A stretch of 21,294 nt of DNA from Octopus sinensis (GCF_006345805.1 NW_021823802.1:1-21294), one strand, 5' to 3'. Positions 3,116-21,223 are shown, numbered from the stretch's first letter. Numbers and translations are program-made. Notes: generated by a model from the letters alone, not told the origin.

Positions 3116-4812
3116 TTCTTTTATTCTTTTACTTGTTTCAACCATGCGGCTGCGGTCATACTGGAGCACCACCATGGTCTAGCTGATTTCCTCAGCTCCT
3201 GTATGTGTCTTTGCCCCAACTGCTGCCCATTTGGTGTACAAGAGAGTTTGATTCCACTCCCCTCGTCTATGCTTTATGTCAGGCTGTTTGTTCATCCGGT
3301 ATTGTGGAGAGGAGGATGTTTAGTTTTCAGGACATCTACTTCCTCCGTATGCACATTTCTTAATTTTTGTGTCAGGGCATTGAAGAGCTATGGACCTTTG
3401 AACCCCAAACTATTGCAGTACCTGGTCCTGCATTTAGATGAAGTGGATGGTACCATAGGTACAATACAATGGCGGCCAGTTCTGGCAATTGTATAACACT
3501 CAATGCCAAAATTAGGTACTAGCCCTTCAAGGGTTTTCCCTATGTAGATTATTACATATTTGTCGAGCCCTCGCTCCAGGGTGTAAGGCTGCAGTTTTCT
3601 CAGTCTCCCCTGTAGCTCATCTGCTGCATTGTTCCAATCATTTTAGTGTAGAGGCGTTGGACTGCCCAAGCTCCGCTGTTAGTTTGACACTGTGATGACC
3701 ATAACTGGGAGCAGTAGTCCAGGCGGCTGAAAACAAAGGTTATCCACAGGGTCAGCATAATTTCTTTGTCTCTTGTCTTGAAGGACCTCAGTATCCACCC
3801 TTCCAGTTGTCTGAACTTTGTTGTCATCTTGGTAATGTGTATATAAAATGATGCGTCATTGCACATACTGCTCCCCAAGTCTTTCACTGCCTCTAACTCT
3901 GGGATTGTAGTGCTTTCGGGTCCTGTATATGCAGGCTGTAGTGCATTCATGAGTAGATTGTGCAGTGCTTGAAATTTTCCAGCATTAAACTGTATCCGAC
4001 CCACTTGTATATCGAATTCGAGTCCCGCTATAAGCTTGCGACGTCATCTTGATGTTTTTTTATTGCCTGCGATAATTTTGTATTATCGGCATAGCTAGTG
4101 ACAGTGGCTGTCCGAGTAACCGTAGGCATGTCTAAGAGGGCTATTATGAACATAATGGCCCCAGAACAGTTTCCTGTGGGTGGGGATGCCCCTAAGGATT
4201 TGAGTTTCCTCAGAAAGAGCAACATTGGCTGCAACATTCTGACTTCTATCTTTAATGAAGTCATGCAACAACTCTCCCAGTTTACTAGCAATTCCAAGGC
4301 CTCAAAGCTTATGACATATCATGCTGTAATCTACCTTATCAGATGCCTGATATCTGAATGGCCAAGCAGTTGTTTTAAAACCCAGATTCTTCCTGGACGA
4401 AATCCGTGCTGTGTATTGTTCAGCAGGTCATTCTCTTCTAGGAATATTGAGGCCAGACTATCAAAAACTAAAAATTGGCTTGTAGTTTTTGGCCTCTGCT
4501 CTGCTTCCACTTTTGTGAATAGAGCGTATAATGTTTTCTTATAGCTTTTTATGAAGTTTACCACTTGCAAGGAAACTTTGGAAGAGCATCTGAAGTGGTT
4601 TCGTAACATGATTACATAACTTAGGACCAGTTGCGGAGCTTGATCTCATTTCCTCTATGGCCGCTGTCAAATCTGTAATCGATGGTTGGCGCCTCTTTTT
4701 TTAGAGCAGAAGTATTTAAGAATTCAGCCGGGTTTTTTATCTGCATGTGTCCAAGAGGGGAAGAGATGACACTTCAAATTGTTCACTAAGTATCACACTT
4801 ATCCTTCCTGGG
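3116..4812 (-). mobile_element. 5'-truncated, decayed CR1-like LINE (RT region to 3' UTR)
   Basis: Minus-strand frames give ILSEQFESV, QHGFRPGR, TSYADNTKL (decayed YADD), VKDLG, WILRSFKTRD, SRLDYCSQLWS and VQR. These are typical CR1/L2-group RT and post-RT motifs. The 3' end is AAACAAGTAAAAGAATAAAAGAA. Confidence 0.85.
3600..4609 (-). pseudogene. Frameshifted non-LTR reverse transcriptase remnant
   Basis: ORF-track pieces 4331-4609, 4028-4297 and 3600-4004 are collinear RT segments broken by stops and frameshifts. The catalytic YADD reads YADN. Confidence 0.85.
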
Positions 4813-6651: not shown

Positions 6652-7105
6652 GGATCTTTTCGGTTTGAACGGCAGTTTATTCTAGCGGTGTCATATGAAA
6701 TTGTCACCCATAATTATGACCCTAGTATCGATCTATTGCATTTCAATCTGTTTTAGTGTTAGGGTTAGTTAGGGTTAGTTAGGGTTAGAGTTAGGGCTAG
6801 GGTTAGGGGTGGGGGGAAGGGTATCTTTTTTCTTTACAAATGTAAATAAACCCAATCTGTTTCTTAAACGAGGGACATATCATACGGCACAGAATATTTT
6901 CCCCTCAATAGACGTCATTGATTGGTTGAAATTTCAAAAATTGAAGAAAAACAACAATAAATATCTTACAAACTATAGAATTTTCTCAATAAAGCCAAGA
7001 GAAAAAGATGTTTTATAAACACATTCTACCAGTATACGAAGATTAAAAGTGTTTAGTTACGTGGAAATTATTTTTAAAAAACTGCCGTTCAAACCGAAAA
7101 GATCC
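6652..7105. mobile_element. MITE with 8-bp TSD and GG termini (Merlin-like), carrying TTAGGG repeats
   Basis: Perfect 27-bp TIR GGATCTTTTCGGTTTGAACGGCAGTTT. Perfect TSD AAAACTTC at 6644-6651 and 7106-7113. A second copy lies at 19291. The superfamily call is inference from the GG ends plus 8-bp TSD. Confidence 0.85.
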
Positions 7106-8310
7106 AAAACTTCTACAACTTAAAAACAAGAACCAGTTCTTACAACAACTAAGGTCTCTAGGGTTAGTTAACCATTTATAATACAAAAATCATTCTGATT
7201 TTAATGAGGTTGAAAGCAGTACAAATTCGTTTATATATTCTGAGAAAATTAATAATGTAAATGAAATAGACCCTATCAAATATTAGAAAGCTTTTAACGA
7301 TAATATCTTTAATTTTTTTTTTAAAGTCAACTTCTCAATCTTCCAATGACAATAATTGAGAAGTTAAATATATAATGAATGAGATTAGATAAAAGGATTA
7401 AATGCCGACGTAAACGAGAAACTGTTATCACATCCAAGGATCACAGATACGATTTTGATATCAACCCTAAATTGGATTCATAAACCAAGCCAAAATAGAA
7501 GATGAGTTTAATATCAATCCTAGATTTAGACTTACAAATATAACTGGAATATCAGCAGAGTTCATCACTGAAAAGATTTCAAGCAAGATTAATGAGAAAA
7601 TTGAAAATGGTGATTTTACGATAATGGATTAATAGTGACGGTGTTCAAGCTCATTAAATATAACGTAACTCTAGGTTTACCCAGCTAAAAATTGTAGGTG
7701 TCTATTCATGTATGACTCCTTCTTTCGTCCATAAGATATAAAATTATACAAAAAGGTAAGTGGAAAATTAGAGAGAAAAGTCTTATATTAATGGAACAAA
7801 AGAGATGCACTTTATGCACCGTAGCGAATGCTACGATATTGCAATATACAAAAGCCTCTGATTCTCAGACTATCTGAAAACCAGAACATTTCGGACATTG
7901 TAGGCATTTCTCCAAATTTCTATTGAAGTTCTGGCATCTCACTAATCCTTCTCAGTTATTACTTATTCTGTATCTCCCCCGCCAACTAACTCATTGCTAC
8001 TCCTTTCGTGTGTCTCGTGTCATTTGTTAAATCTATCAGCTCTTTCTTTGTTTTGCGTAGAACTTTGATTGCAAAATTCAGCTTCACCTTCTGGTCATCT
8101 CCTGGAGATAAGGAAGAGGTGCTCACCTTCGAAACTTTCAGAGCCGCGTCTAGTGTTTCTTCCCCCACCCAACCACCTTTCTTTTAACAGATTTCTCCCC
8201 TCTTCTAGGAAGAAAGCGTTTAAATGATTTTTAATATGACGTCTAGCAACATGACATTCCACTATGAACGACCAGTCGTAAGACATTTCATGCCAGATCA
8301 TTTTATGATT

Positions 8311-8702
8311 AAGGCGGTGAGCTGGCAGAAACGTTAGCACGCCGGGTGAAATGCTGAGCGGTATTTCGTCTGCCGTTACGTTCTGAGTTCAAATTCCGCC
8401 GAGGACGACTTTATCTTTCATCCTTTCGGGGGTTGATAAATTAAGTATTAGTGAAGAAATAGGGTCGATATAATCGACTTAATCTGTTTGTCTGTCCTTG
8501 TTTGTTCTGTGTTTAGCCCCTTGTGGGTAATAAAGAAATAGGTATTTCTTCTGTCTTCACGCTCTGAGTTCAAATACCGTCGAGGTCAACTTTGCCTTTC
8601 ATCCTTTCGAGATCGATAAATTAAGTACCAGTTGCATACTGGGGTCGATCTAATCGACTGGCCCACTCCCCCAAATTTCGGGCCTTGTGCCTAGAGTAAA
8701 AA
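8311..8702 (+). mobile_element. SINE family C, dimer (head + 2 units)
   Basis: Head AAGGCGGTGAGCTGGCAGAAACGTTAG and B-box GTTCAAATTCC (8387-8397). Units start GGTATTTC at 8360 and 8541. 16-bp TSD AGATCATTTTATGATT at 8295-8310 and 8703-8718. Confidence 0.9.
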
Positions 8703-9851
8703 AGATCATTTTATGATTTTGTAGGATCACAAGAACTTGCATGTCCATTGTAGCCGCACGGAACGAAATAATGCCAAAAGATCACAAGACCATCGACCAA
8801 CATCCCAAATTGAGTTACGAAAATACCCAAGAGCTGGGGTCAACACCGTTACCTATATATTATATTTTTAACGGTAACCCTCGTGTTTTTATCCGAAAAA
8901 CTGTCGAGTTATTCTCTGGGCAGGTTTGTGACGAACTGACTCAGAGTATCTGTTTCAAAAATAACATATATTTGTGATTAATGCTTTTCTTCTCTCTGTG
9001 TAGCAGGCCTCGTTCTATCTGTCAGTGAGGATTTCCCCAAAAGATTTTTTTCATGAATACAAGGAATGTCCCAGCAGTTTCTTTCATTTGTGCGTAAAAT
9101 ACACCTACTTTCGTTTTCAAATATTGCTAGCATGCATGCTGTCATTCTTTCATCTAAAATCTTCGTGCTTTTAACTCGACTGTTGGAAGTAGTTTGCAAA
9201 AGGTTGAAATTGCTCTTTCATTCAAATTTATATCGTTACTTTTATTTAACAAAGTTTGTGTGTAGGTGGGGGTTGTTGTTGTTGCTGCTGATGCTGTTGT
9301 TGTAACTACTGTTATCGTTTTGTTTCCCTTTTCGCTTCGGTTGTTTAAATCAATATTATTATTATTATTATTGTTATTTGCCACAATGTTATTTATTTTC
9401 TCCGCGTGGGTCTGTTTGTTCTGTGTTATAAGCCTTCATGTTTTATGTTTTCTGTTTCTTTTTAAATTATTCAAACGTTCTTTTGCTTTTCACGATCGTT
9501 TGACTGGAGGGCGTACTTGTTTATATTAGTAAAAGCCATTACTGCGGCGAGCACCTCTTCCGCTGCTACGCGCATGCTTGAGAACAGATAAGCGAAGGAA
9601 ATTTAAAGCGTCGGAAATGTCGTTTGACGAAACATGGCAAGAAAAGACGACATTTTCTTGCTTCTCTTTGTGATACTCCCACGCGTTACGACACATAGAT
9701 AATAATCAGATTTTTCAAAAACAAATAGACAGAATCTAATCCATAAACAGAAAAACAAGTAAACACGTTTTTCAAGAAGAAGACGATAAGGAAGAACCAT
9801 TTTTACAATGGCCCTCATGACCATTGTAGAAAGGATTCTTATGAAAGTTTG

Positions 9852-9917
9852 AGAGAAGGAATAAGTCGATTACATCAATCCACCGCTTGACTGGTTCTTA
9901 TTTTATTGACCCCGAAG
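9852..9917 (-). mobile_element. Diverged SINE family C fragment
   Basis: AAGTCGATTACATCAA...CTGGTTCTTATTTTATTGACCCCGAA matches the unit core in antisense. Confidence 0.6.
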
Positions 9918-9950
9918 GCGAGAAATGGAAGAAAATTTGAAGAAAGAAGG

Positions 9951-9996
<46 letters not shown>
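9951..9996. repeat. (TAA)n microsatellite
   Basis: Directly visible. Confidence 0.95.
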
Positions 9997-9997
<1 letters not shown>

Positions 9998-10502
9998 TGA
10001 TTGGAAGTGTTATCATGTACATTGTTTTGTCTTGGTATAAAAGATGGGCTACAGTAAATATTCTGCTCAATACCACAGATTTGCTTGTCAGTTGTTTGAC
10101 CTTAACCAGTTGAGCATGTCCCTTAGTGGCTGACGATATGTGCATCTCCGATCACGAGCAGAAGTAGTGGGGGGAGCATCATAGCCATGTGTTGAGAAGG
10201 ATTCTTTGGGGTTTGAATAATTCACCTCTGGAAACATGGGTGTTTCGTTCAACGTCCTTAAACAACCCTATTCAGGGACCTTTTGAGCGGGATGGGTACT
10301 CGATCTGAAGAAAATTCTAACTGGGCTCCACCTGCAAGGTCATGTGCTGTTTATCTTGATATGAGATCACCATGTCGCGCATATATGGTTGTGATGCATG
10401 TGCCTGGTGTACCCTTATCAGACGGGTAGTTATGATGGGTATACTGGGCTTCGTATATTTTACCCCAGTGTCACTTTGATGGCATGAACTGCTCGCTCAC
10501 TC
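9997..10502. mobile_element. Unclassified ~505-bp element bounded by (TAA)n on both sides
   Basis: Complex, higher-GC, apparently non-coding block with sharp edges at TAA tracts. No TIR or Pol III box found. Mobile status is inferred. Confidence 0.45.
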
Positions 10503-10533
<31 letters not shown>

Positions 10534-10573
10534 GTAATAATAATAATAGTAATAGTAATAATAATAATAACAA
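10503..10573. repeat. (TAA/TAG/CAA)n microsatellite
   Basis: Directly visible. Abuts the 3' tail of the minus-strand SINE at 10579. Confidence 0.9.
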
Positions 10574-10578
10574 CAGTG

Positions 10579-10783
10579 ATTCAAATTTTGGCACAAGGCC
10601 AATAATTTCGGGGGAAGGTAAGTTGATTACATCGACCACCCAGGACGTGAATGGTACTTATTTTATCGACCCCGAAAGTATGAAAGGCAGTCAACCCCCG
10701 ACGGAATTTGAACTCAGAATGTAATGACAGACGAAATGCCGCTATGCATTTTGGCCGGCGTGTTGACGATTCTGCCAGCTCAC
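10579..10783 (-). mobile_element. SINE family C, monomer with terminal tail
   Basis: Head GTGAGCTGGCAGAATCGTCAAC, B-box GTTCAAATTCC, the unit core, then tail GGCCTTGTGCCAAAATTTGAA running into (TAT)n. Confidence 0.85.
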
Positions 10784-11006
10784 ACCACAACACACACACA
10801 CACACACACACCACTCATGACTGTGTATGTGTGTACGTGTGTATCTAAGTGTGTGTGTGTGTGTGAGCGCTTGTGTATAAGAAAAGTATATTTACTAACA
10901 GAAGATATGCTATTAAAATAAATTATCTTTTGCATACCATTTTTTAAATCACTCTGTCGCCCTAATGAAATTCTTTACACACATGCATACACTCACACAC
11001 TGACAA

Positions 11007-11050
<44 letters not shown>

Positions 11051-11792
11051 TCAGTGTGATCTATATACTTTTATAGAGAGTGAGAGAGTTGTGGTAAATA
11101 TATATAGAGAGGGGGAAGTTTACCATGAGAAAACCGAAAACTGGATGATACAAAAATGTATGGAGATATTTTCTGTTGGTGTCACAGATATTGAAATTTT
11201 AAAATAAAGAGAAAAATTTCAAATTTGGTATATTGATATACTTTTTGATGCTGAATCCTACTTTGTGGTTCAGTTATGCCAAAAAAATAACTGCAGGAAA
11301 ATGTTACAGAGGTTTAAAGTTTGGTCATTTTTACCGAATCAGAAAACGGGATTTGTAGGTGTTAGCTGTGATAAAACGAAAGTAAACATGAGAAGACGAA
11401 ATTTTAGATAAAACAAATACACATAGAGAGGAATTGATAAAGAGTTTGGTAAATTATAGAGACAGTTTGATAATGAATGATACAGAGAAAGCAATTTATA
11501 GATCTAAAAAGTGAATTATTTCTCGTAGAAAATTACATATATATTTTTTTATTATAATTTACGGACGACATTGTCTTTGAAATGCAGATTTCGAAAATGA
11601 AATTCGTTTTTCTCGATAATGCGTAGTTACAGAGCATTTCGGATATATATATATAAATATGCGCACACACTAAATAAATGCTAGTGTATGTGGTTATGCC
11701 TGTGTGTTTTAATATTTGAGGGAATAAAATCCAAAACTTACAAGGAAAAAAATTCAATTTAGAAATACTAAATCAAATTTCACACAATATAA

Positions 11793-12109
11793 TATATATA
11801 TAAAAATTATCAAAAAAAACATCTTTTATCAATTCAAAATGAACAATTAAATTACACCATCAAGAAAATTACATATAATAGAAATATTGACATTAAAATA
11901 ACAATAGAATGTCAAAGATTAAGTAAATTGCAAAAAAAAAATAATAACTTTTATTATCATTATTATTTTTTTTTTTGCAATTCACTTAATCTTTGACATT
12001 TTATTGTTATTTTAATGTTAATATTTCTATTGTTTGTAATTTTCTGGATGGTGCAATTTAATTGTTCCTTTTGAATTGATAAAAGATGGGTTTTTTTCTA
12101 ATTTTATAT

Positions 12110-12114
<5 letters not shown>
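11793..12114. repeat. Long imperfect palindrome (~155-bp arms, ~12-nt spacer), foldback/MITE-like
   Basis: 11793-11947 is the reverse complement of 11960-12114 at roughly 90% identity (e.g. CATCTTTTATCAATTCAAAA / TTTTGAATTGATAAAAGATG). Flanked by (TA)n. Confidence 0.85.
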
Positions 12115-12143
<29 letters not shown>

Positions 12144-12144
<1 letters not shown>

Positions 12145-13516
12145 TGTATGTGTCTTCTATCTTATATATTCCCTACTGAGGAAGGACCCGGTTTCCTAAC
12201 AAAGATACAAGGCTCCAATCTTTGGGGTGCAGTTAACACAGACAAATTCACATTTGGAACTTGAGAAAAGTCTTGCATATTTTTATTGTTCCACTCACTA
12301 ATGTACGAATCAGCTGGTCAATTTCTATTTCTGAAATCCCGGTTTATCCAGATTCTCCTTCAAGCATTTACTAACTCCAATTATTATTGGTATGAAGCTG
12401 GAGGTTTCGAAGCAGTTGTTCATAGATATCTTCTTTTTCTTTGATTTTCAAAGAGATATTTATATCTGTAGGGCAGCTAACCTCTATAATGGTACACACC
12501 TTTTCCCCTCTGTCCCAAACAATATCCGGCCTGTTATGCTTACATTTGACAGAAGTTTTGATGGGAATATTCCACTAGTATTCCTTGAGTTGGTGTTTAT
12601 TAATGTATTCCATAACAGCGGGACTTTCTAAATTTATTTCAGGACAGTCTTTTTTGCGGACGGCATGGTAAATTGTTTTAGCAACAACATCGTGCTGCAT
12701 AGCAATGTAATACTGTGACGACATTTTAGGACGGCTGTTAATCACATGCGTAATGGCTTCCACAGAAACTTGACATAGCCTACACATACGGTTGTACCTT
12801 GGGATTACAAGTGCGTCACTTTCTCTCTCGTTCACCAGGTACTTTGTGGGAATCTCCCGTTCTTGGATTGCAAATGCATAGCCTTCAAAGTGTGATGTGA
12901 TGTAGTGGTCTTGTGTCCATGAGAGGCTGCGCTTCGTGTCAATTCTACCGTCTTCTTCAAGCCTCCGGGCAACATACCCATAGATGGTCTTTTTTTTTCT
13001 TTGTATGCTGAGTGCTTTCCATCCAGGTCTTCTCTAATGTAAGAGAGCCCAGCTGTTTTGGAGCTGTATAGGAGATCATCAGGAAGAGAGTGTTTCTTGA
13101 AGAGTTCATGCCAACTCGTACAATGTTGCTCACTTCACTTTTCAGGACTGCATTAATATATTTATTTTTTTCTGCTGTTGTTTAGCAGATGCTGCCTGAG
13201 TGATACCATTCGGCATTCGAAGGCCGTCTGCCACCTTCATTTCTTCTTAGGTAAAGCCTGTCAACATTACTGTTTCCATGGAAGTTCCCAGTTGTCAGAA
13301 CCTTGCATGTTTTGATATCTATGGGGTGGAATTCCTCTACAGGCCAATCAAGTATCCCAAACGTTGGGATCAGCACTGGTACTGCAAATGCAGTTCTGTA
13401 TATTATGCTGTTCTATGTACTGGGATACAAGTTGATATGTGGGTATTTTCAGGTAAGGTCTTAAATTTCAGGCTGGCAGTACTATAGGTTTTTCTCCGCT
13501 CTATGTACAAATGCAC
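12144..13516 (-). mobile_element. 5'-truncated decayed R4/Dong-like non-LTR retrotransposon (RT C-terminus, CCHC knuckle, RLE endonuclease)
   Basis: Minus frames give AFAVPVLIPTFGILDW, IDIKTCKVLT, VDRLYLRRNEGGR, CRLC..VEAITHV, QHDVVAKTI, WNIPI, HNRPDIV, IIEVSCP and GTIKICKTFLKF*. This is the motif order of RLE-encoding LINEs. Many stops and frameshifts. Confidence 0.85.
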
Positions 13517-13517
13517 A

Positions 13518-13793
13518 CGCCGAGGTCGACTTTGCCTTTCATCCTTTCGGGGTCGATAAATTAGGTACCAGTTACGCACTGAGGTCGATATAGTCGACTT
13601 AATCCGTTTGTCTCTCCTTGTTTGTACCCTCTGTGTGTAGCCCCTTGTGGGCAGTAAAGAAATAGGTATTTCGTCAGTTCTTACGTTCTGAGTTCAAATT
13701 CCGCCGAGGTCGACTTTGCCTTTCATCCTCTCATCCTTTCATGCCTTTCATCCAAAACATTTAGTGCCTTGTGCCAAGAGTAGAAACGAATAA
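13518..13793 (+). mobile_element. SINE family C, headless dimer with rearranged second unit
   Basis: Starts inside unit 1 at CGCCGAGGTCGAC. Junction AAAGAAATAGGTATTTC is present. The second unit has CTTTCATC reiterated about four times, then the terminal tail GCCTTGTGCCAAGAGTAGAA. Confidence 0.85.
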
Positions 13794-14574
13794 TGTTTAT
13801 GAGTATGTGTAGATGTTAGTGCTGTTAGTGTATTTAATTGTTGTTCTCGCCGAGCAAGTTTTCCAACCCACTACGACTGTCTCTCTTTATTTATTTCTTG
13901 TTATTTGACAAGTATGTATGCGTGCTTGTCCGTTCTTGCTTTTATTATTTTTGTTTATGTCGTGCAAATTTGTATTTCGAGATATGAGATTTTTTTGTCT
14001 TTATACTTTTGAGTGCATCTGATTGTTTCATTACCATTTACCTAGTTGTTGTATTTTTTCTTTTGTTTTATTTTGTTAGTCTTTTTTAAAAAATTATCCT
14101 CTTCGTGTATTCGAAGATTTCACGTCTTGTTTTGATGAAGTGTCCCCCTCCCCCCCCCCCCCCGTGCTTCTCATTTTTTTTTTTTTTTTGTCAACATCTT
14201 CCACCGTTCTTCAAGTAGAAGAAAATCTGCTGAATATTGACTATTTTGATTATTGAAAACAAAGAAATTAATATAAAATGTCGTGCGAAAGACAAATCTT
14301 CCGTCTACCCCATTATCGGTACAGACATCTTGACGTACCGAATTTCTTTGTAAAATCTTCCAAAATGAAAAGTTTTTAGCGGAATTCTGGTTTACGCACC
14401 TCATATATAACGCCTCATAACTTTTTTTTATGTTTTGAAATTTTCAAAACAAGTTTTGCGAATTTCTGTTTTTACAGGAATTCATACGATCATGCAAAAA
14501 AAACTCTTTTTGTGTGTATGATTTAAGGGTTATTTAGCTGTTATTTTTAGCATATTTCACAACCAGCTGATACC

Positions 14575-14978
14575 TATTTCTTTACTACCCACAAGGGGCT
14601 AAACACAGAGAGGACAAACAAGGACAGACAAACGGATTAAGTCGATTAGATCGACCCCAGTGTGTAACTGGTACTTATTTAATCGACACCGAAAGGATGA
14701 AAGGCAAAGTCGACCTCGGCGGAATTTGAACTCAGAACGTAGCGGCAGACGAAATACCTTTTTCTTTACTACCCACAGGGGGCTAAACACAGAGACGACA
14801 AACGGATTAAGTCGAGTATATCGACCCCAGTGCGTAGCTGGTAATTAGTTAATCGACCCCGAAAGGATGAAAGGCAAAGTCGACCTCGGCGGAATTTGAA
14901 CTCAGAACGTAGCGGCAGACGAAATACCGCTAAGCATTTCACCCGACGTGCTAACGTTTCTGCCAGCTCGCCGCCTTA
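14575..14978 (-). mobile_element. SINE family C, dimer
   Basis: Head at 14978-14930 plus two units. 14-bp TSD AACCAG(C/T)TGATACC at 14561-14574 and 14979-14992. Confidence 0.9.
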
Positions 14979-15484
14979 AACCAGTTGATACCGTCTACGT
15001 TTCTTTATCATTCTGACATATATTAATCTATTTTCAATATTTTTCCCCACATAAACACATTTAATGGAATCATGATGCACCCAAGGGTGCTCCATTGCTG
15101 GGATTGAAAGAAAATATTCATATTGTTTGTATTTTAAACTTTTTTTTATTCGAAAAAGAGTGGAATTTTTAGGATTTGTGGGGGAGGAGGAGGAGGTGTT
15201 TAAAAACTTCTTTTAAAATTTTTTCATAGTCGTGTGAAATTCTCGAGTATAGAGCACAAATCCGCAAATTCTTTTCTGAAAATTCCAAAACATGAAAAAT
15301 TATGAGTGACTATATAGGGTGCTTAGACCAGATTTCCACCATTTTTTTTTATATCTAGTAAAACCTTTATAATTATACAAATCTACCGGCGCCGTCACGG
15401 GGGACGTTTGCATGCAAACAAAACATAATAATTATTCGTTCTAATATAGCACAATGCCTGAATTCTGATTTGGTAGAGACAGCT

Positions 15485-15645
15485 GATTACATCAACGCCC
15501 AGAACTCGACTCTTACTTTTTTTATCGACTTCAAATGGATAAAAGTTTGAGATGATCTCGGCTGCATTTAAACTCAAAACGTAGAGCCCTGGAAGAAATA
15601 CTGCTAAGCATTTTGTCCGACGCACTAATGATTCTGTCAGCTCAC
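15485..15645 (-). mobile_element. Old, diverged SINE family C monomer
   Basis: GTGAGCTGACAGAATCATTAGTGCGTCGGACAAAATGCTTAGCAGTATTTC head and degenerate core. Confidence 0.7.
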
Positions 15646-15800
15646 TGATTTTACGTGCACCAGGATAGACCATTGAAATATATACCGACAACAGAATAAG
15701 CATTAACATAGGGATTACAAACGCCTGAGGATGTAAAACAAAGATACATGAAAACGCGGTGAGAGCAGAACGTTATACAATTAAAAAGTTTTTATCATTA

Positions 15801-16280
15801 GGCACAGGCGTGGCTATGTGGTATGAAGCTTGCTTCTCAACCACATAGTTCCGGGTTCAATCCCAGTGCATGGCACCTTGGACAAGTGTCTTCTACTATA
15901 GCTTCGGCCGACCAAAGCCTTATGAGTAGATTTTGTAGGCGGAAACTGAAAGAAGCCTGTCATATATATATATATATATATATAATTTTTTCTATATTTA
16001 CCTCCATCATTGTTTGAATTACATAGTAGTGGTTTTTCTCTAATTTATATATATATATATATATAGATAGATAGATAGATAGATAGATAGAAATAAGTGT
16101 GTGTGTGTTTCTTTGTGTTTATGATTGTGCCCCAGAATCGGTTGACAAGCCTCGTAACTTAGCGGTTCAGCAAAACAGTCCGATAGAATAAGTACAAGGC
16201 TTTAAAAAATGAGTATTGGTGGAGGGGGGGTCGATTCATTCGATTAAAAGCTCTTCAAAAACAAGTGAAGGATAAAAGAA
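15801..16280 (+). mobile_element. SINE family B (CORE-like) with internal microsatellite
   Basis: A-box TGGCTATGTGG, B-box GGTTCAATCCC and CORE-like ACCTTGGACAAGTG. Internal (TA)/(TAGA)/(GT) tract. The 3' half is CTTAGCGGTTC...GAATAAGTAC...GGGGTCGATTCATTCG...AAACAAGTGAAGGATAAAAGAA. Confidence 0.75.
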
Positions 16281-16358
16281 CCCCAATGCCCAACTGGTAC
16301 TTAGTTTATCATTCCTGAAAGGATGAAAAGCAAATTCAGCCTCGCCGGATTTTACTTC
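16281..16358 (-). mobile_element. SINE family C core fragment
   Basis: ACTGGTACTTAGTTTATC..CCTGAAAGGATGAAAAGCAAA matches the unit core in antisense. Confidence 0.6.
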
Positions 16359-16387
16359 AACAACAACAACAACAACAATAATATAAT

Positions 16388-16448
<61 letters not shown>

Positions 16449-16467
16449 CACAACAACAACAACAATA

Positions 16468-16502
<35 letters not shown>

Positions 16503-16516
16503 AATAATAATAATAT

Positions 16517-16550
<34 letters not shown>

Positions 16551-16590
16551 TTAATAATAATAATAATAATAATAATATAATATTAATAAT

Positions 16591-16621
<31 letters not shown>

Positions 16622-16652
16622 TTAATAATAATAATAATAAAATAATAATAAT

Positions 16653-16691
<39 letters not shown>

Positions 16692-16722
16692 TTAATAATA
16701 ATAATAATAATAATAATAATAT

Positions 16723-16762
<40 letters not shown>

Positions 16763-16784
16763 TTAATAATAACAACAACAACAC

Positions 16785-16818
<34 letters not shown>

Positions 16819-16827
16819 TTAAATAAT

Positions 16828-16858
<31 letters not shown>

Positions 16859-17044
16859 CAACAACAACAACAACAACACAACAACAATAATAATAATAAT
16901 AATAATAATATATAATAATTTAATAATAATAATAACAACAACAACAACAACAATAATAATAATAATAATAATAATAATATTAATAATAATAATAAAATAA
17001 TAATAATAAAATATTAATAAATAAATAACAACAACAACAACAAC

Positions 17045-17078
<34 letters not shown>

Positions 17079-17118
17079 TTATAACAATAACAATAACAAT
17101 AACAATAATAATAATAAT
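16359..17118. repeat. ~760-bp (TAA)n/(CAA)n compound microsatellite
   Basis: Directly visible, with recurring TATT interruptions. Confidence 0.95.
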
Positions 17119-17698
17119 CCGTTCTACTATAGACACAAGGCCTAGAATTTGAGGTAGAGGATAGTCGATTACATCGACCCCAGTGTTTCACTAGTACTTA
17201 ATTTATCGACCCCGAAAGGATGAAAGGCAAAAGCGATCACGGCGGAATTTGAACTCAGAACGTAGCGACAGACGAAATACCTATTTCTTTACTACCCACA
17301 AGGGGGTAAACACAGAGAGGACAAACAAGGACAGACAAACGGATTAAGTCGATTACATCGACTCCAGTGCGTAACTGGTACTTATTTAATCGACCCCGAA
17401 AGGATGAAAGGCAAAGTCGACCTCGGCGGAATTTGAACTCAGAACGTAGCGACGGGCAAAATACCTATTTCTTTACTACCCACAAGGGGCTAAACACGGT
17501 GGGGACAAATAAGGACAGATAAACGGATTAAGTCGATTACATCAACCCCAGCGTGTAACTGGTACTTATTTAATCGACCCCGAAAGGATGAAAGGCAAAG
17601 TCGACCTCGGCGGAATTTGAACTCAGAACGTAACGGCAGACGAAATACGGCTAAGCATTTCGTCCAGCGTGCTAATGATTCTACCAGCTCGCCGCCTT
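17119..17698 (-). mobile_element. SINE family C, trimer ending in terminal tail
   Basis: Head at 17698-17650 and units with a 184-bp period (CTATTTC at 17281 and 17465). The last unit ends GGCCTTGTGTCTATAGTAGAACGGA followed by (TTA)n. TAA tracts lie on both flanks. Confidence 0.9.
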
Positions 17699-17912
17699 AA
17701 TAATAGTAATAATAATGGTTTCAAATTTTATCATAACAGCGATAATAACAACAACAACGACTAGCGGGACACATTTCTAATATGGTGAATAAATTTATAT
17801 GGAACATCATAACATTGTTTCATTTATATTAAAGATTGCGATTGTGCCTGAAATTTCCTTCCATAGTTTCAAGAGTGTTAAAAGCACAACACTCAAACAC
17901 ATTGCATCAAAC

Positions 17913-17913
17913 A

Positions 17914-17955
<42 letters not shown>

Positions 17956-18078
17956 CAGCAGCAGCAGCAGTAGTTGTTGTTGTTGTTGTTGTTGTTGTAA
18001 CAGTAGTTTTAGTAGGAGGAGGAGAAGCAGGAAGCGGACTATTAGTTGTGATGGTGGTAGAGTTGATTGTGGTAAAAT

Positions 18079-18118
<40 letters not shown>

Positions 18119-18242
18119 TGTAGTAGTTGTTGTTGTTGTTGTTGTAACAGTAGTTGTAGTAGTAGTCGGAGAAGGAGGAAGCGAACTATTAGTTGTGATG
18201 GTGGTGGTGGTAGAGTTGATTGTGGTAAAAGTAGTAGTAGTA

Positions 18243-18288
<46 letters not shown>
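17913..18288. repeat. Compound trinucleotide repeat (GTA/GCA/GTT/GGA/GGT) with a duplicated ~120-bp module
   Basis: GTAACAGTAG...GGAAGCG(G/A)ACTATTAGTTGTGATGGTGGT...AGAGTTGATTGTGGTAAAA occurs twice (~17995-18078 and ~18140-18230). Confidence 0.9.
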
Positions 18289-18801
18289 TTCTGTTATTGT
18301 ATTACAATGCTGAGTAACGGCAGACTGTGCGCACTCTGTTATATCTCGAAGGAACGTCCATTAACATCGATGAAGTTAACGGCCATGAAAACGAAAATCA
18401 ACGTTTGACAGACAGCTTTTGATTTGTAATTAATGCATTTATTTATTTAATGTTATTGCTCTGTGCCTATTATTGTAAGTTATGCATTTGCAAATAGTTT
18501 GTACTCAATTTCTAACTGATCAGAGACAAAGCATAGCAAACTATGCAAATGAAAATCATATTATTCGGTCGAAAGTTAAAAGAGGAATATGTTCTGTGTA
18601 TTTGATGCAAATATATGTACGAAAATGGATCGAGCGAAGTTCCGCAGCGCCAGAAATAAGTAAACCAGCACCCAATAAAAACGATGTCGATTTACTTAGA
18701 GAGCTTGGCGCTTCAATTCCCGAAAATGAAACAAAAGACAATGTATAAATGCATAATGTAATAAATGAATAAAATGTATGAAACGAATACTTTCCCATAC
18801 T

Positions 18802-19186
18802 GTGTGGAGCACTCCGTCAGTTACGGACGATGGAGGGTTCCGTTGATCCGAATCAACGGAACAGCCTGCTCGTGAAATTAACGTGTAAGTGGCTGAGCAC
18901 TCCAAAGAACATGTACCCGACGTAGTTCTCGGGTATATTCAGCGTGACACAGAGAGTGACAAGGCCGGCCCTTGAAATACAGGTACAACAGAAACAAAAA
19001 AGTAAGAGTGAGAGAAAGTTGTGGTGAAAGAGTACAGCAGGGATCACAACCATCCCCTGCCGGAGCATCGTGGAGCTTTAGGTGTTTTCGCCCAATAAAC
19101 ACTCACAACGCCCGGTCTGGGAATTGAAACCGCGATCCTACGACCGCGAGTCCGCTGCCCTAACCACTGGGCCATTGCGCCTCCAC
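18802..19186 (-). mobile_element. tRNA-derived SINE, family A, tail type 3 (full length)
   Basis: Collinear with the 5938 copy in the opposite orientation. Flanked by a 41-bp direct repeat at 18761-18801 and 19189-19229 (1 mismatch). Confidence 0.9.
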
Positions 19187-19290
19187 GTATAAATGAATAA
19201 AATGTATGAGACGAATACTTTCCCATACTACATACATACTTTACAGCTACACTCCATCCCCAAGAGCGTAGGCTGGCAAATATACACTTT

Positions 19291-19721
19291 GGATCTTTTC
19301 GGTTTGAACGGCAGTTTTTTTAATATAATTTCCACGTAACTAAACACTTTTAAACTTCGTATACTGGTAGAATGTGTTTATGAAACATCTTTTTCTCTTG
19401 GCTTTATTGAGAAAATTCTATAGCTTGTAAGATATTTGTTTGTTTTTTTTCTTCAATTTCTGCAATTTCAACCAATCAATGACGTCTACTGGAGGTGAAA
19501 ACATTCTGTGCCGTATGAATATGTCCCTTGTTTAAGAAACAGACTGGGTTTATTTACATTTGTGAAGAAAAAAAAGATACCCTCCCCCCCACCCCTAACC
19601 CTAACTAACCCTAACCCTAAAACAGATTGAAATGCAATAGATCGATTCTAGGGTCATAATTATGGGTGACAATTTCATATGACACCGCTAGAAAAAACTG
19701 CCGTTCAAACCGAAAAGATCC
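19291..19721. mobile_element. Second copy of the Merlin-like TTAGGG-bearing MITE (inverted relative to 6652)
   Basis: Perfect 30-bp TIR GGATCTTTTCGGTTTGAACGGCAGTTTTTT. Flanks TACACTTT / TGCACGTT (6/8 match, decayed TSD). CCCTAA repeats at 19593-19620. Confidence 0.85.
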
Positions 19722-19886
19722 TGCACGTTCGTATCTGGAGAGAGAATAGCTCGAACCTGGAAGCAACTTTGAATCCAAACAGAATTGCAAATTTTAGATA
19801 CACTAAACAAAAAAACCAAGACATCAGATTTAGAAATAGAAAATTTAAAAGAATTTTATTTGAAAATACAAGCAAAGAACAAATAA

Positions 19887-20427
19887 GTATATTTCTTTAC
19901 TACCCACAAGGGGCTAAACACAGAGAGGACAAACAAGGACAGACACACGGATTAAGTCGATTATATCGACCCCAGTGCGTAACTGGTACTTATTTAATAG
20001 ACCCCGAAAGGATGAAAGGCAAAGTCGACCACGGCGGAATTTGAACTCAGAACGTAGCGGCAAACGAAATACCTATTTTTTTTACTACCCACAAGGGGCT
20101 AAACACAGAGAGGACAAACAAGGACAGACAAACGGATTAAGTCGATTATATCGACCCCAGTATGCAACTGGTACTTATTTAATCGACCCCGAAAGGATGA
20201 AAGGCAAAGTCGACCACGGCGGAATTTGAACTCAGAACGTAGCGGCAAACGAAATACCTATTTCTTTTACTACCCACAAGTGCGTAACTGGTACTTATTT
20301 AATCGACCCTGAAAGGATGAAAGGCAAAGTCGACCTCGGCGGAATTTGAGCTCAGAACGTAGCGGCAGACGAAATACGGCTACGCATTTTGTCCGACGTG
20401 CTAACGTTTCTGCCAGCTCGCCGCCTT
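19887..20427 (-). mobile_element. SINE family C, trimer
   Basis: Head at 20427-20380. TACCCACAAG at 19901, 20086 and 20271 gives a 185-bp period. The head-proximal unit has an internal deletion at 20280/20281. 13-bp TSD AAAGAACAAATAA at 19874-19886 and 20428-20440. Confidence 0.9.
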
Positions 20428-21223
20428 AAAGAACAAATAATTAAAAGAACAAATAATTAAAAGAGCAAATAATTAAAGACTGGAAACGTAAAGAATATCC
20501 AAAGAGGACCCCCCCCCCCACTATTCCCTGTTTGATGCTAATGCTGTCAACTAATTTACTAAAACAGGAGTGGTATGTGATGACAGCTAATCATCGTTTG
20601 TGTCGGTTTAACATCAATGCTGTATGCAAAAAGATTACAACCAACCAACTGCCGGCTGTTACATTCACTGCTCCGATACGGTAGAGAAATTAGCATGAAA
20701 TTAAGTTTTTTGTTTTTTTTTTTTTGTAGGAGTGATGGTTTAAAAAAATATAACAATTCATTCTTGAAGAGAAGAAAATATAAATCAGAGGAATCGTGTC
20801 AGATAAAGAGACAGAAATTAGAAAATTAGACTAAACACAGACTTACAAACAGTTTGAAATTAGACAGTGTAAAAAAACATGTATACAAGTAAAAGAACGG
20901 GTTACGACGCATTAGATTAATACTTAAAAGAGATTTACATGCCAAAAATAAGTTAATAGGTATCATTATTCGAGCTATTTCAGAAATAAATTAAGTTATA
21001 ATATTCTTAACAGAATAACAAACTATTAGATTAGGAAATAGACGGTGCAACAAGAAAAATAATGACTCTATTTTGAAATGCACAAAATCCGATACAAAGT
21101 TATTATATTTATGATGAATACAAGGAAATCTTCCGTAACAAGGAAATCGTAATAAAATATCTACTGAAGGTAGTCAAAGAGATGTAGACAAAATAGAATG
21201 AAACTAATACAAGTATCTGAAAT

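What the first reader, a model, noticed from the sequence alone, without database searches (positions are those of the whole stretch)
8295..20440. Concatemeric SINE: one Pol III head plus 1-3 tandem ~184-bp units, retrotransposed as whole multimers
Seen in sequence: family C occurs as monomer (10579), dimer (8311, 13518, 14575) and trimer (17119, 19887). Every extra unit restarts at the same point, GGTATTTC, between the A and B boxes. Clean TSDs bracket the entire multimer at three loci (16 bp at 8311, 14 bp at 14575, 13 bp at 19887), so unit number varied in the template RNA or during reverse transcription and is not simply post-insertion satellite growth. Inference: possible mechanisms are repeated template jumping, multimeric master loci, or rolling reverse transcription of a circularised unit RNA, as proposed for retrozymes. 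I do not know whether this has already been described for this family.
Basis: partly seen in the sequence, partly recalled or inferred. Interest (0 to 1): 0.75.

Follow-up and report, generated by a model that had tools for sequence, protein, structure and literature searches.

The report
Multi-unit octopus SINE copied as a whole
An octopus short retrotransposon (SINE) occurs here with one promoter-bearing head followed by two or three ~184-bp copies of its own body and tail, and these were inserted as whole multimers; this is real, but it is a form of complex SINE already described in another mollusc, not a new mobility mechanism.

Summary
The window, from an octopus genome, carries five multi-unit copies of one SINE. 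Each has a ~49-nt head, then 2-3 units of ~184 bp. All seven unit junctions are in the same register (…GTAAAGAAATA|GGTATTTCG…).

Target-site duplications (TSDs) bracket the whole multimer at 8311 (15-16 bp, perfect) and at 14575 (13/14). The one at 19887 (13 bp) is less clean.

New findings:
- The linker L that ends each internal unit is a genuine retrotransposition 3' end. Head-unit-L monomers with their own TSDs exist in O. sinensis and O. bimaculoides.
- The unit is therefore a whole SINE minus its first ~49 nt, broken in the anticodon-stem region of a weak tRNA-Arg-like head.
- At least one multimer mixes two families (8311: an L-type unit plus a T-type unit).
- The "monomer" at 10579 belongs to an older T-tailed lineage.
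- Related contigs carry other head-to-tail junctions.

Best reading: a complex SINE, created by an RT-linked joining event. It is transcribed from its single head through terminator-free units and retrotransposed whole. In-register changes then alter unit number.

TSDs do not exclude unit gain after insertion, and two units of the 19887 trimer look like a later duplication. There is no ribozyme, so the rolling-circle/retrozyme reading is rejected.

The closest precedent is the TSD1-(SINE)n-TSD1 arrays of the clam S. broughtonii. Interest is moderate.

The parts
8311..8703 (+). E1: dimer. Head 8311-8359, L-type unit 8360-8540, T-type unit plus A6 8541-8703. TSDs (A)GATCATTTTATGATT at 8295-8310 and 8703-8718.
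   Evidence: 15 nt perfect; unit 2 groups with O. bimaculoides T-type monomers
10574..10790 (-). E2: older monomer, head-unit-T tail, followed on its 3' side by (ATT)n (window 10503-10573). It is 76-81% identical to the multimer units.
13520..13795 (+). E3: 5'-truncated dimer. It starts inside unit 1 at CCGAGGTCGAC. L-type unit 13520-13664; second unit 13665-13795 with an internal deletion and a T-like end. No TSD found.
14575..14979 (-). E4: dimer ending in L. Head 14929-14979, unit 1 14759-14928 (14-nt slippage deletion in L), unit 2 14575-14758. TSDs AACCAGCTGATACC at 14561-14574 and ACCAGTTGATACC at 14980-14992. In sense orientation the 3' TSD copy begins GGTAT, which is also how a further unit would begin.
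17119..17700 (-). E5: trimer. Head 17650-17700, L-type units 17466-17649 and 17282-17465, T-type unit 17119-17281. Its 3' tail is the 742-bp (AAT)n array at 16377-17118.
19890..20429 (-). E6: trimer ending in L. Head 20379-20429, unit 1 20259-20378 (65-nt internal deletion), units 2 and 3 at 20074-20258 and 19890-20073. Candidate TSDs AAAGAACAAATAA at 19874-19886 and 20428-20440, inside a 16-bp minisatellite.
15485..15650 (-). Old, diverged monomer of the same lineage (head, unit and T-like tail reaching down to about 15430). Shows that the ancestral form has one unit.
14929..14979 (-). Head of E4, used as the reference head. It has about 20 nt of leader, then an A-box-like TAGCACGTCGGG, then the 5' arm of a predicted 13-bp hairpin. 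The repeated unit starts at the first base of the 3' arm, which is nt 28 of the weak tRNA-Arg(TCG)-like cloverleaf.

Best explanation
Family C is a SINE transcribed by RNA polymerase III.

**Anatomy**
- A ~49-nt 5' part: leader, an A-box-like motif, and the 5' half of a degenerate tRNA-Arg-like structure.
- A B box.
- A conserved body domain.
- One of two related 3' tails: T (…GGCCTTGTGCCTAGAGTAGAA plus (ATT)n or A-rich sequence) or L (65 nt, ending …CCCTTGTGGGTAGTAAAGAAATA).

**Origin (inferred)**
In the lineage of this window, an L-tailed copy became joined at its exact 3' end to a second copy lacking its first ~49 nt. The left side of the junction is the element's own retrotransposition terminus. 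The event was therefore most likely linked to reverse transcription. Either the partner LINE's enzyme jumped from a partly copied RNA to the 3' end of a second SINE RNA, or a 5'-truncated copy inserted at the tail of an existing one.

**Spread**
- The composite kept one complete promoter (A box in the head, B box in unit 1).
- It has no run of four or more T on the sense strand. Polymerase III can therefore read through all units (inferred).
- The whole RNA is copied into new sites by target-primed reverse transcription, which leaves 13-16-bp TSDs (shown for E1 and E4).

**Change in unit number (inferred)**
Unit number then changes in register, by one or more of three routes:
- template switching between identical units during reverse transcription;
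- unequal recombination in source copies or after insertion;
- initiation at an internal L tail of a longer RNA.
For: **Junction and TSDs**
- Seven junctions in one register.
- TSDs around whole multimers: E1 15-16/16, E4 13/14. Chance of such a repeat is 0.66% per random interval.

**L is a true 3' terminus**
- Head-unit-L monomers carry their own TSDs: a 16-bp TSD at L004 14396-14640 (O. sinensis) and an 11-bp TSD at L003 40605-40897 (O. bimaculoides).
- E4 and E6 end at the same L end as the internal junctions.

**Units differed at birth**
- E1 unit 2 groups with T-type monomers (support 90/91).
- E1 unit 1 pairs with the E5 T-type unit (89/84).
- Identity within an element (91-96%) is no higher than between elements (up to 96.2%).

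**Heritable subfamily structure**
- The two trimers, E5 and E6, share head variants (GGAC instead of GGGT) and C as the first base of unit 1. The dimers E1 and E4 share the alternative states.

**Read-through and promoter**
- No T run of four or more on the sense strand of E1-E4 and E6. Only 2.9% of shuffles of E4 lack one.
- Relaxed ARAGORN finds a tRNA-Arg(TCG)-like cloverleaf. It places an A-box-like motif in the head and the B box in the unit.

**Incomplete copying**
- E3 is 5'-truncated, as expected from incomplete reverse transcription of a multimer.

**Recurrence and precedent**
- Related contigs show other L-to-truncated-head junctions: L005 and L009 in one shared register, and L006-L008.
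- The same architecture is published for a clam (PMC11481361).
Against: - Only five multimers were available.
- None was found in about 122 kb of O. bimaculoides and O. sinensis sequence, which holds 11 head-bearing copies. A genome-wide series could not be built, and the species of the window is unknown.
- No source (master) copy, transcript or partner LINE was identified.
- The tRNA-like call appears only at an 80% threshold. It is absent from default ARAGORN and from Rfam.
- Antisense T-runs are also few, so the lack of terminators is only modest evidence.
- The junction links L both to L-family and to T-family units. Under a single origin this needs extra recombination close to the junction.
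Confidence: 0.6

Rival explanations
1. Each multimer is assembled anew at its own insertion. The LINE reverse transcriptase copies a SINE RNA up to a fixed point: position 49, the top of the predicted hairpin, or a processed RNA 5' end there. It then jumps end-to-end to the 3' end of another L-tailed SINE RNA, once or twice, and finishes on a full-length RNA that supplies the head.
For: - The left side of every junction is the normal 3' terminus of the element.
- Units of different families are combined in E1.
- The junction occurs both as L|L-family and as L|T-family. This is easier to explain if the breakpoint is set by mechanism.
- The break lies exactly at the loop/3'-arm boundary of a 13-bp hairpin that pairs in 91% of cells across six copies.
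- Other junction types in relatives show that such joining recurs.
- End-to-end template jumping is an established property of non-LTR reverse transcriptases (own knowledge: R2 and L1 biochemistry).
Against: - Seven junctions show no added or missing bases. Template jumps usually leave some heterogeneity.
- Covariation in the hairpin is not significant, and its fold z-score is only -1.5.
- The trimers share head variants that the dimers lack, which suggests inheritance.
- No free 'unit RNA' has been shown.
Confidence: 0.2
2. Only dimers are retrotransposed. Third units arise after insertion, by unequal crossing-over or replication slippage between the two units, as in minisatellite or satellite growth.
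For: - E6 units 2 and 3 are sisters (91/89) and share two private substitutions.
- TSDs would stay in place after such growth.
- SINE-derived tandem arrays attributed to recombination are documented (PMC10702118; PMC11481361).
Against: - E5 units 1 and 2 are only 91% identical, share no private changes, and are each closer to E4 unit 2.
- The third unit of E5 is of a different type (T).
- The duplication in E6 could equally have happened in a source copy.
Confidence: 0.15
3. Rolling-circle reverse transcription of a circular ~184-nt unit RNA, as proposed for retrozymes.
For: Only the regular head-to-tail periodicity.
Against: - No hammerhead or other ribozyme family matches at E<=1 across the window or at E<=10 on E4.
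- No CUGANGA…GAAA core lies inside any unit.
- Every array starts with a unique head and ends at a defined tail, and the units are not permuted.
- T-type and L-type units are mixed in one array.
Confidence: 0.03

Closest known systems
TSD1-(SINE)n-TSD1 tandem SINE arrays of the blood clam Scapharca broughtonii (Mob DNA 2024, PMC11481361)
   Same: The architecture is almost identical. The first SINE has a complete tRNA-related head. Internal repeats are truncated at one constant point in the head. The last copy has the same head truncation and a complete tail. One TSD pair surrounds the whole array.
   Different: - A different SINE and a different mollusc class.
- In the clam the internal units have truncated tails. 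Here each internal unit ends at a full, independently used 3' terminus (L).
- The clam arrays discussed in detail have more than 3 units and were attributed to recombination.
- No test of whole-array retrotransposition was reported in the passages read.
Complex (dimeric or trimeric) SINEs as defined in SINEBase, for example Alu, B1-dID and Twin (PMC3531059)
   Same: Two nearly complete SINE modules fused into a new retrotransposing family with one functional promoter.
   Different: In classical complex SINEs the module number is fixed, and often each module has its own head. Here the repeated module lacks the A-box part, and its number varies from 2 to 3 among copies.
SVA elements (VNTR region) and the quasi-oligomeric CHRS SINEs
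   Same: Non-autonomous retrotransposons whose internal tandem repeat number differs between copies that are each flanked by TSDs (CHRS; SVA: own knowledge).
   Different: Their repeat units are about 20-50 bp and are not near-complete copies of the element itself.
SINE-derived satellites of squamates (PMC10702118)
   Same: Tandem repeats built from a portion of a SINE.
   Different: Those are satellite-like arrays that grow at the DNA level. No head-plus-TSD structure is reported for them. The arrays here are short, dispersed and TSD-flanked.
Animal non-LTR retrozymes
   Same: Tandem units of about 150-400 bp dispersed in animal genomes.
   Different: Retrozymes are defined by a hammerhead ribozyme in each unit. 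None is present here.
Octopus tRNA-derived SINEs OR1/OR2 (Ohshima & Okada 1994)
   Same: An octopus SINE with a possible tRNA-Arg-like head. The OR families are cited as octopus SINEs with a conserved core. That the 'R' in the name stands for arginine is my recollection only.
   Different: Identity with OR1/OR2 is untested.

Membership tests
SINE (SINEBase definition) | Short (<1 kb), interspersed rather than tandem in the genome, flanked by TSDs | tested here: met
   Elements are 217-582 bp, lie at six separate sites on both strands, and have TSDs at E1, E4 and (less clean) E6.
SINE (SINEBase definition) | Head derived from a polymerase III-transcribed RNA, with an internal promoter | tested here: inconclusive
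   A B box (GAGTTCAAATTCC) and an A-box-like TAGCACGTCGGG are present. A tRNA-Arg(TCG)-like fold appears only at the relaxed ARAGORN threshold. There is no hit with default ARAGORN or Rfam.
SINE (SINEBase definition) | [quoted passage not shown] | not testable with these tools
   Only 21 kb plus about 122 kb of octopus DNA could be read. Head-bearing copies number 6, 9 and 2 in the window, L003 and L004.
Complex (multimeric) SINE | Two or more nearly complete SINE modules joined and propagated together by retrotransposition | tested here: met
   The unit is the SINE minus its first ~49 nt. Head-unit-L monomers exist separately with their own TSDs. Multimers are flanked as a whole by TSDs. The same junction occurs at five loci.
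TSD1-(SINE)n-TSD1 arrays (clam type) | First copy with a full head, internal copies truncated at one constant head position, last copy with a complete tail, one TSD pair around everything | tested here: met
   E1 and E5 fit exactly. E4 and E6 end at the L tail.
Retrozyme | Self-cleaving hammerhead ribozyme in each repeat unit | tested here: not met
   No Rfam ribozyme family at E<=1 (window) or E<=10 (E4), and no core motif inside any unit.
Retrozyme | Circular RNA intermediate | not testable with these tools
   Needs RNA data.
SINE-derived satellite | Long, homogenised tandem arrays of a SINE fragment that grow at the DNA level | tested here: not met
   At most 3 units. Each array has a head and a defined tail. 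Units are not homogenised within arrays.
OR1/OR2 octopus SINEs or CORE-SINE superfamily | Sequence identity to the published consensus or to the CORE domain | tested here: inconclusive
   No reference sequence is available. Alignment to a MIR consensus recalled from memory was not above shuffles. The body domain GTCGACTTTGCCTTTCATCCTTTCG.GGTCGATAAA is shared with unrelated SINE heads in L001 and L002, so it is some conserved SINE domain.

The most novel reading that the evidence does not exclude
The SINE builds its concatemers by a programmed step. Its RNA is cut, or the reverse transcriptase is halted, at the apex of a conserved 13-bp hairpin in the anticodon-arm region (position 48/49). The LINE enzyme then jumps end-to-end onto the 3' tail of another SINE RNA. 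Every insertion would therefore draw a fresh number and mixture of units (L- and T-family) from the RNA pool. That would make it a natural, sequence-defined reporter of template jumping by a non-LTR reverse transcriptase in vivo.
Probability: 0.15. Interest if true: 0.65.

Novelty: new member of a known kind. Interest (0 to 1): 0.4.

Why it matters
- It shows, in a cephalopod, how a SINE turns into a complex SINE with a variable number of modules.
- It shows that each internal module ends at a real retrotransposition terminus. This ties the origin of the junction to reverse transcription and not to ordinary DNA duplication.
- Octopus genomes are rich in SINEs. A family whose copies record both unit number and unit type could be used to measure template switching, internal initiation and post-insertion recombination separately.
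- It also matters for annotation. Such arrays are easily mis-scored as several fragmented SINE hits or as tandem repeats.
- It does not reveal a new mobility mechanism.

Tried and rejected
1. **Ribozyme/retrozyme.** Rfam with permissive thresholds on the whole window and on E4, plus a hammerhead core pattern, found nothing in the units.
2. **tRNA origin.** Default ARAGORN and Rfam were negative. Only a relaxed ARAGORN run gave a tRNA-Arg-like fold.
3. **More copies by DNA pattern.**
   - Viral and prokaryote-genome collections gave nothing.
   - The metagenome scan gave two contigs that share only the conserved body domain.
4. **More copies through pseudo-proteins.**
   - The first two protein searches gave almost nothing, and two look-ups failed.
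   - The representative search plus a profile search finally gave access to O. bimaculoides and O. sinensis chromosomes and to short Logan contigs.
   - The J1-like pseudo-ORF P0023 sits on a Logan contig and was not eligible for DNA retrieval.
5. **Partner LINE.**
   - BLAST of the T and L tails against the window found no LINE 3' end.
   - By eye there is a weak resemblance of T to the 3' region of the LINE-like fragment at about 12150-12260, but it did not reach BLAST significance.
   - Pfam gave no hit for the LINE ORF pieces.
6. **CORE-domain identity.** Alignment to a recalled MIR consensus was not above shuffles.
7. **Hairpin covariation.** Pairing is kept (91%) but covariation is not significant with six sequences.
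8. **Apparent dimer at L003 40605-40897.** Rejected as an assembly artefact: an N10 gap with the same sequence on both sides.


Full report
**1. What is there**

The window is octopus DNA. An ORF read across one of the repeats matches an Octopus bimaculoides entry at 82% identity. Related pseudo-ORFs map to O. bimaculoides and O. sinensis chromosomes.

Tandem Repeats Finder reports period 184-185 arrays at 17163-17648 and 19892-20280.

In sense orientation the elements are built from four modules:
- **H**, the head: about 49 nt, AAGGCGGCGAGCTGGCAGAAACGTTAGCACGTCGGGTGAAATGCTTAGC.
- **U**, the unit body: 119 nt starting GGTATTTCG, containing the B box GAGTTCAAATTCC and a conserved body.
- **L**, a 65-nt linker tail ending …CCCTTGTGGGTAGTAAAGAAATA.
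- **T**, another tail: …GGCCTTGTGCCTAGAGTAGAA followed by (ATT)n or A-rich sequence.

| Element | Coordinates (strand) | Structure |
|---|---|---|
| E1 | 8311-8703 (+) | H-U-L-U-T |
| E2 | 10574-10790 (-) | H-U-T-(ATT)n |
| E3 | 13520-13795 (+) | 5'-truncated U-L-U(T) |
| E4 | 14575-14979 (-) | H-U-L-U-L |
| E5 | 17119-17700 (-) | H-U-L-U-L-U-T, followed by 742 bp of (ATT)n |
| E6 | 19890-20429 (-) | H-U-L-U-L-U-L, with a 65-nt deletion in the first unit |

The junction sequence occurs seven times, always in the same register, and never in shuffles.

**2. The target-site duplications**

- E1 has a perfect 15-16-bp TSD.
- E4 has a 14-bp TSD with one mismatch.
- E6 has a 13-bp repeat. It lies in a 16-bp minisatellite and is 3 nt away from the element end, so it is weaker evidence.
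- The E5 flanks are microsatellite. E2 and E3 have no TSD.
- Random intervals in this window show a flank repeat of 13 nt or more in 0.66% of trials.

Whole-multimer insertion is therefore well supported for E1 and E4 and plausible for E6.

**3. What the unit is**

The 3' half of L aligns with T. Both end in …CCTTGTG(2-3 nt)TAG(0-2 nt)TA(A/G)AA….

I obtained 76 kb of O. bimaculoides (L003, 14 kb of it N) and 60 kb of O. sinensis (L004) by way of SINE-derived pseudo-proteins. In those loci the family occurs as monomers:
- H-U-T copies are frequent.
- H-U-L monomers have their own TSDs: TAAAGTATTGGATTAG at L004 14396-14640, and TATAAGGCCTA at L003 40605-40897.

L is therefore a genuine 3' terminus used in retrotransposition. 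The 184-bp unit is a whole L-type SINE minus its first ~49 nt.

The junction joins that exact terminus to a 5'-truncated copy. This is what an event linked to reverse transcription produces. An ordinary DNA duplication would have no reason to end at the element's own terminus. This last step is inference.

**4. Where the break lies**

With thresholds lowered to 80%, ARAGORN folds positions ~21-96 of the element into a degenerate tRNA-Arg(TCG)-like cloverleaf. The A-box-like motif is in the head, and the break is at nt 27/28, in the 5' strand of the anticodon stem.

RNAfold prefers a 13-bp hairpin (element positions 31-43 pairing with 48-60, loop UAGC). The unit starts at the first base of its 3' arm. 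The hairpin is kept in 91% of cells across six copies, but covariation is not significant.

Default ARAGORN and Rfam do not recognise a tRNA. The origin of the head is therefore only tentative.

**5. Were the units different at insertion?**

Yes, at least in E1.
- In E1 the two units are 80% identical over the shared 119 nt. The second groups with O. bimaculoides T-type monomers (support 90/91). With an intact 15-bp TSD this cannot be a duplication in place.
- In E5 the last unit is T-type. It pairs with the first (L-type) unit of E1 (89/84), which shows that bodies and tails have been shuffled.
- Among the L-type units of E4-E6, identities within an element (94.1, 91.3, 95.7, 90.8%) are no higher than between elements (up to 96.2%). 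The pattern is star-like.
- The exception is E6 units 2 and 3. They share two private substitutions and are sisters (91/89). One unit gain therefore happened late, either in a source copy or in place.

**6. Inheritance or assembly anew at each insertion**

Points favouring inheritance from multimeric source copies:
- Seven base-identical junctions.
- Head variants shared by the two trimers (GGAC, and C as the first unit base) against those shared by the dimers.
- A sense strand without T runs of four or more in five of six elements (2.9% of shuffles of E4), which is compatible with polymerase III reading through.

Points favouring repeated jumping:
- The junction links L both to L-family and to T-family units.
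- Short contigs from other sequencing runs (organism not given) show the same kind of joining at other places. L005 and L009 share a junction of the L end to about head position 20. L006-L008 have a third junction.
- L003 65998-66590 holds three full-length T copies head to tail, of different ages.

With five multimers I cannot decide between the two. I give 0.6 to inherited composite masters with in-register changes, and 0.2 to assembly anew at each insertion.

E4's 3' TSD begins GGTAT, the first bases of a further unit. This fits priming at an internal junction of a longer RNA, but it is a single case.

**7. Rejected: the retrozyme or rolling-circle reading**

- No ribozyme.
- A single head and a defined tail on every array.
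- No permuted units.
- Mixed unit types within one array.

The defining feature of retrozymes, per the preprint read, is the hammerhead ribozyme.

**8. Distribution**

The junction is absent from all nine fetched loci. Among head-bearing copies, 5 of 6 in the window are multimers against 0 of 11 in L003 plus L004. The hypergeometric probability, computed by hand, is 6/6188, about 0.001. The multimer subfamily is therefore either specific to the window's species or locally concentrated.

**9. Comparison with what is known**

- SINEBase defines complex SINEs (dimeric, trimeric) and notes quasi-oligomeric families with variable repeat number.
- The closest published case is the clam S. broughtonii. 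Its TSD1-(SINE)n-TSD1 arrays have a full-headed first copy, internal copies truncated at a constant head position, and a last copy with a complete tail.
- SINE-derived satellites are known in squamates.
- I found no paper describing this for an octopus SINE.
- The relation to the OR1/OR2 families of Ohshima and Okada could not be tested.

**Verdict**

This is a real, well-formed multimeric SINE: a new member of a known kind. Its useful twist is that each module ends at a functional 3' terminus.

Noticed in passing
window 18761-18801 and 19189-19229: A 41-bp direct repeat (98% identical) flanks a ~387-bp SINE of another family on the minus strand, with its tRNA-like head at the right end. If this is a TSD, it is unusually long for a SINE.
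   Followed up: partly
window 19291-19320 and 19692-19721: Perfect 30-bp terminal inverted repeats (GGATCTTTTCGGTTTGAACGGCAGTTTTTT) enclose 371 bp that include CCCTAA telomere-like repeats near 19590-19620. It looks like a small DNA transposon (MITE). TTAGGG repeats also occur at 6753-6808.
   Followed up: partly
window 11803-11941 and 11967-12105: A 139-nt inverted repeat, 91% complementary, with arms 25 nt apart: a foldback or hairpin element in AT-rich DNA.
   Followed up: no
window 16377-17118: A 742-bp (AAT)n array with (AAC)n stretches lies directly at the 3' end of trimer E5. It is a greatly expanded SINE microsatellite tail. E5 also has (ATT)n-like sequence and a scrap of another T tail on its 5' side (about 17701-17745), which suggests insertion into an older tail.
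   Followed up: partly
window 20428-20477: A 16-bp minisatellite (AAAGAACAAATAATTA, 3.1 copies) starts exactly at the 5' flank of E6 and contains its putative TSD. The true TSD length there is therefore uncertain.
   Followed up: yes
window 3600-4609 (-) and about 12150-13400 (-): Two decayed LINE-like coding fragments with broken reading frames. The first has one 41%-identical database relative. Neither gave a Pfam hit when searched piece by piece.
   Followed up: partly
L003 65998-66590 (-), O. bimaculoides: Three full-length T-type copies of the same SINE lie head to tail, each starting right after the previous tail (…AGAATAT|AAGGCGG…). Their divergence differs (about 76-92% to the query), which suggests repeated insertion into SINE tails.
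   Followed up: partly
L003 40783-40797: A run of 10 N with the same 55 nt of SINE sequence on both sides mimics a dimer. It is most likely an assembly gap with redundant ends.
   Followed up: yes
L002 6380-6613 and L001 1780-1830 (metagenome contigs): The body motif GTCGACTTTGCCTTTCATCCTTTCG.GGTCGATAAA occurs behind a different, clearly tRNA-like head in L002, so it is a conserved SINE domain shared across organisms. Which named domain it is was not established.
   Followed up: partly
window 17915-18288: A long AGT/GTT trinucleotide array contains an internal duplication of about 125 bp (GGAGGAG…GTGATGGTGGTAGAGTTGATTGTGGTAAAA appears twice).
   Followed up: no
window 15800-15960 (+): One copy of a different, abundant-looking tRNA-derived octopus SINE (…GGTTCAATCCCAGTGCATGGCACCTTGGACAAGTGTCTTC…) ending in (TA)n.
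   Followed up: no
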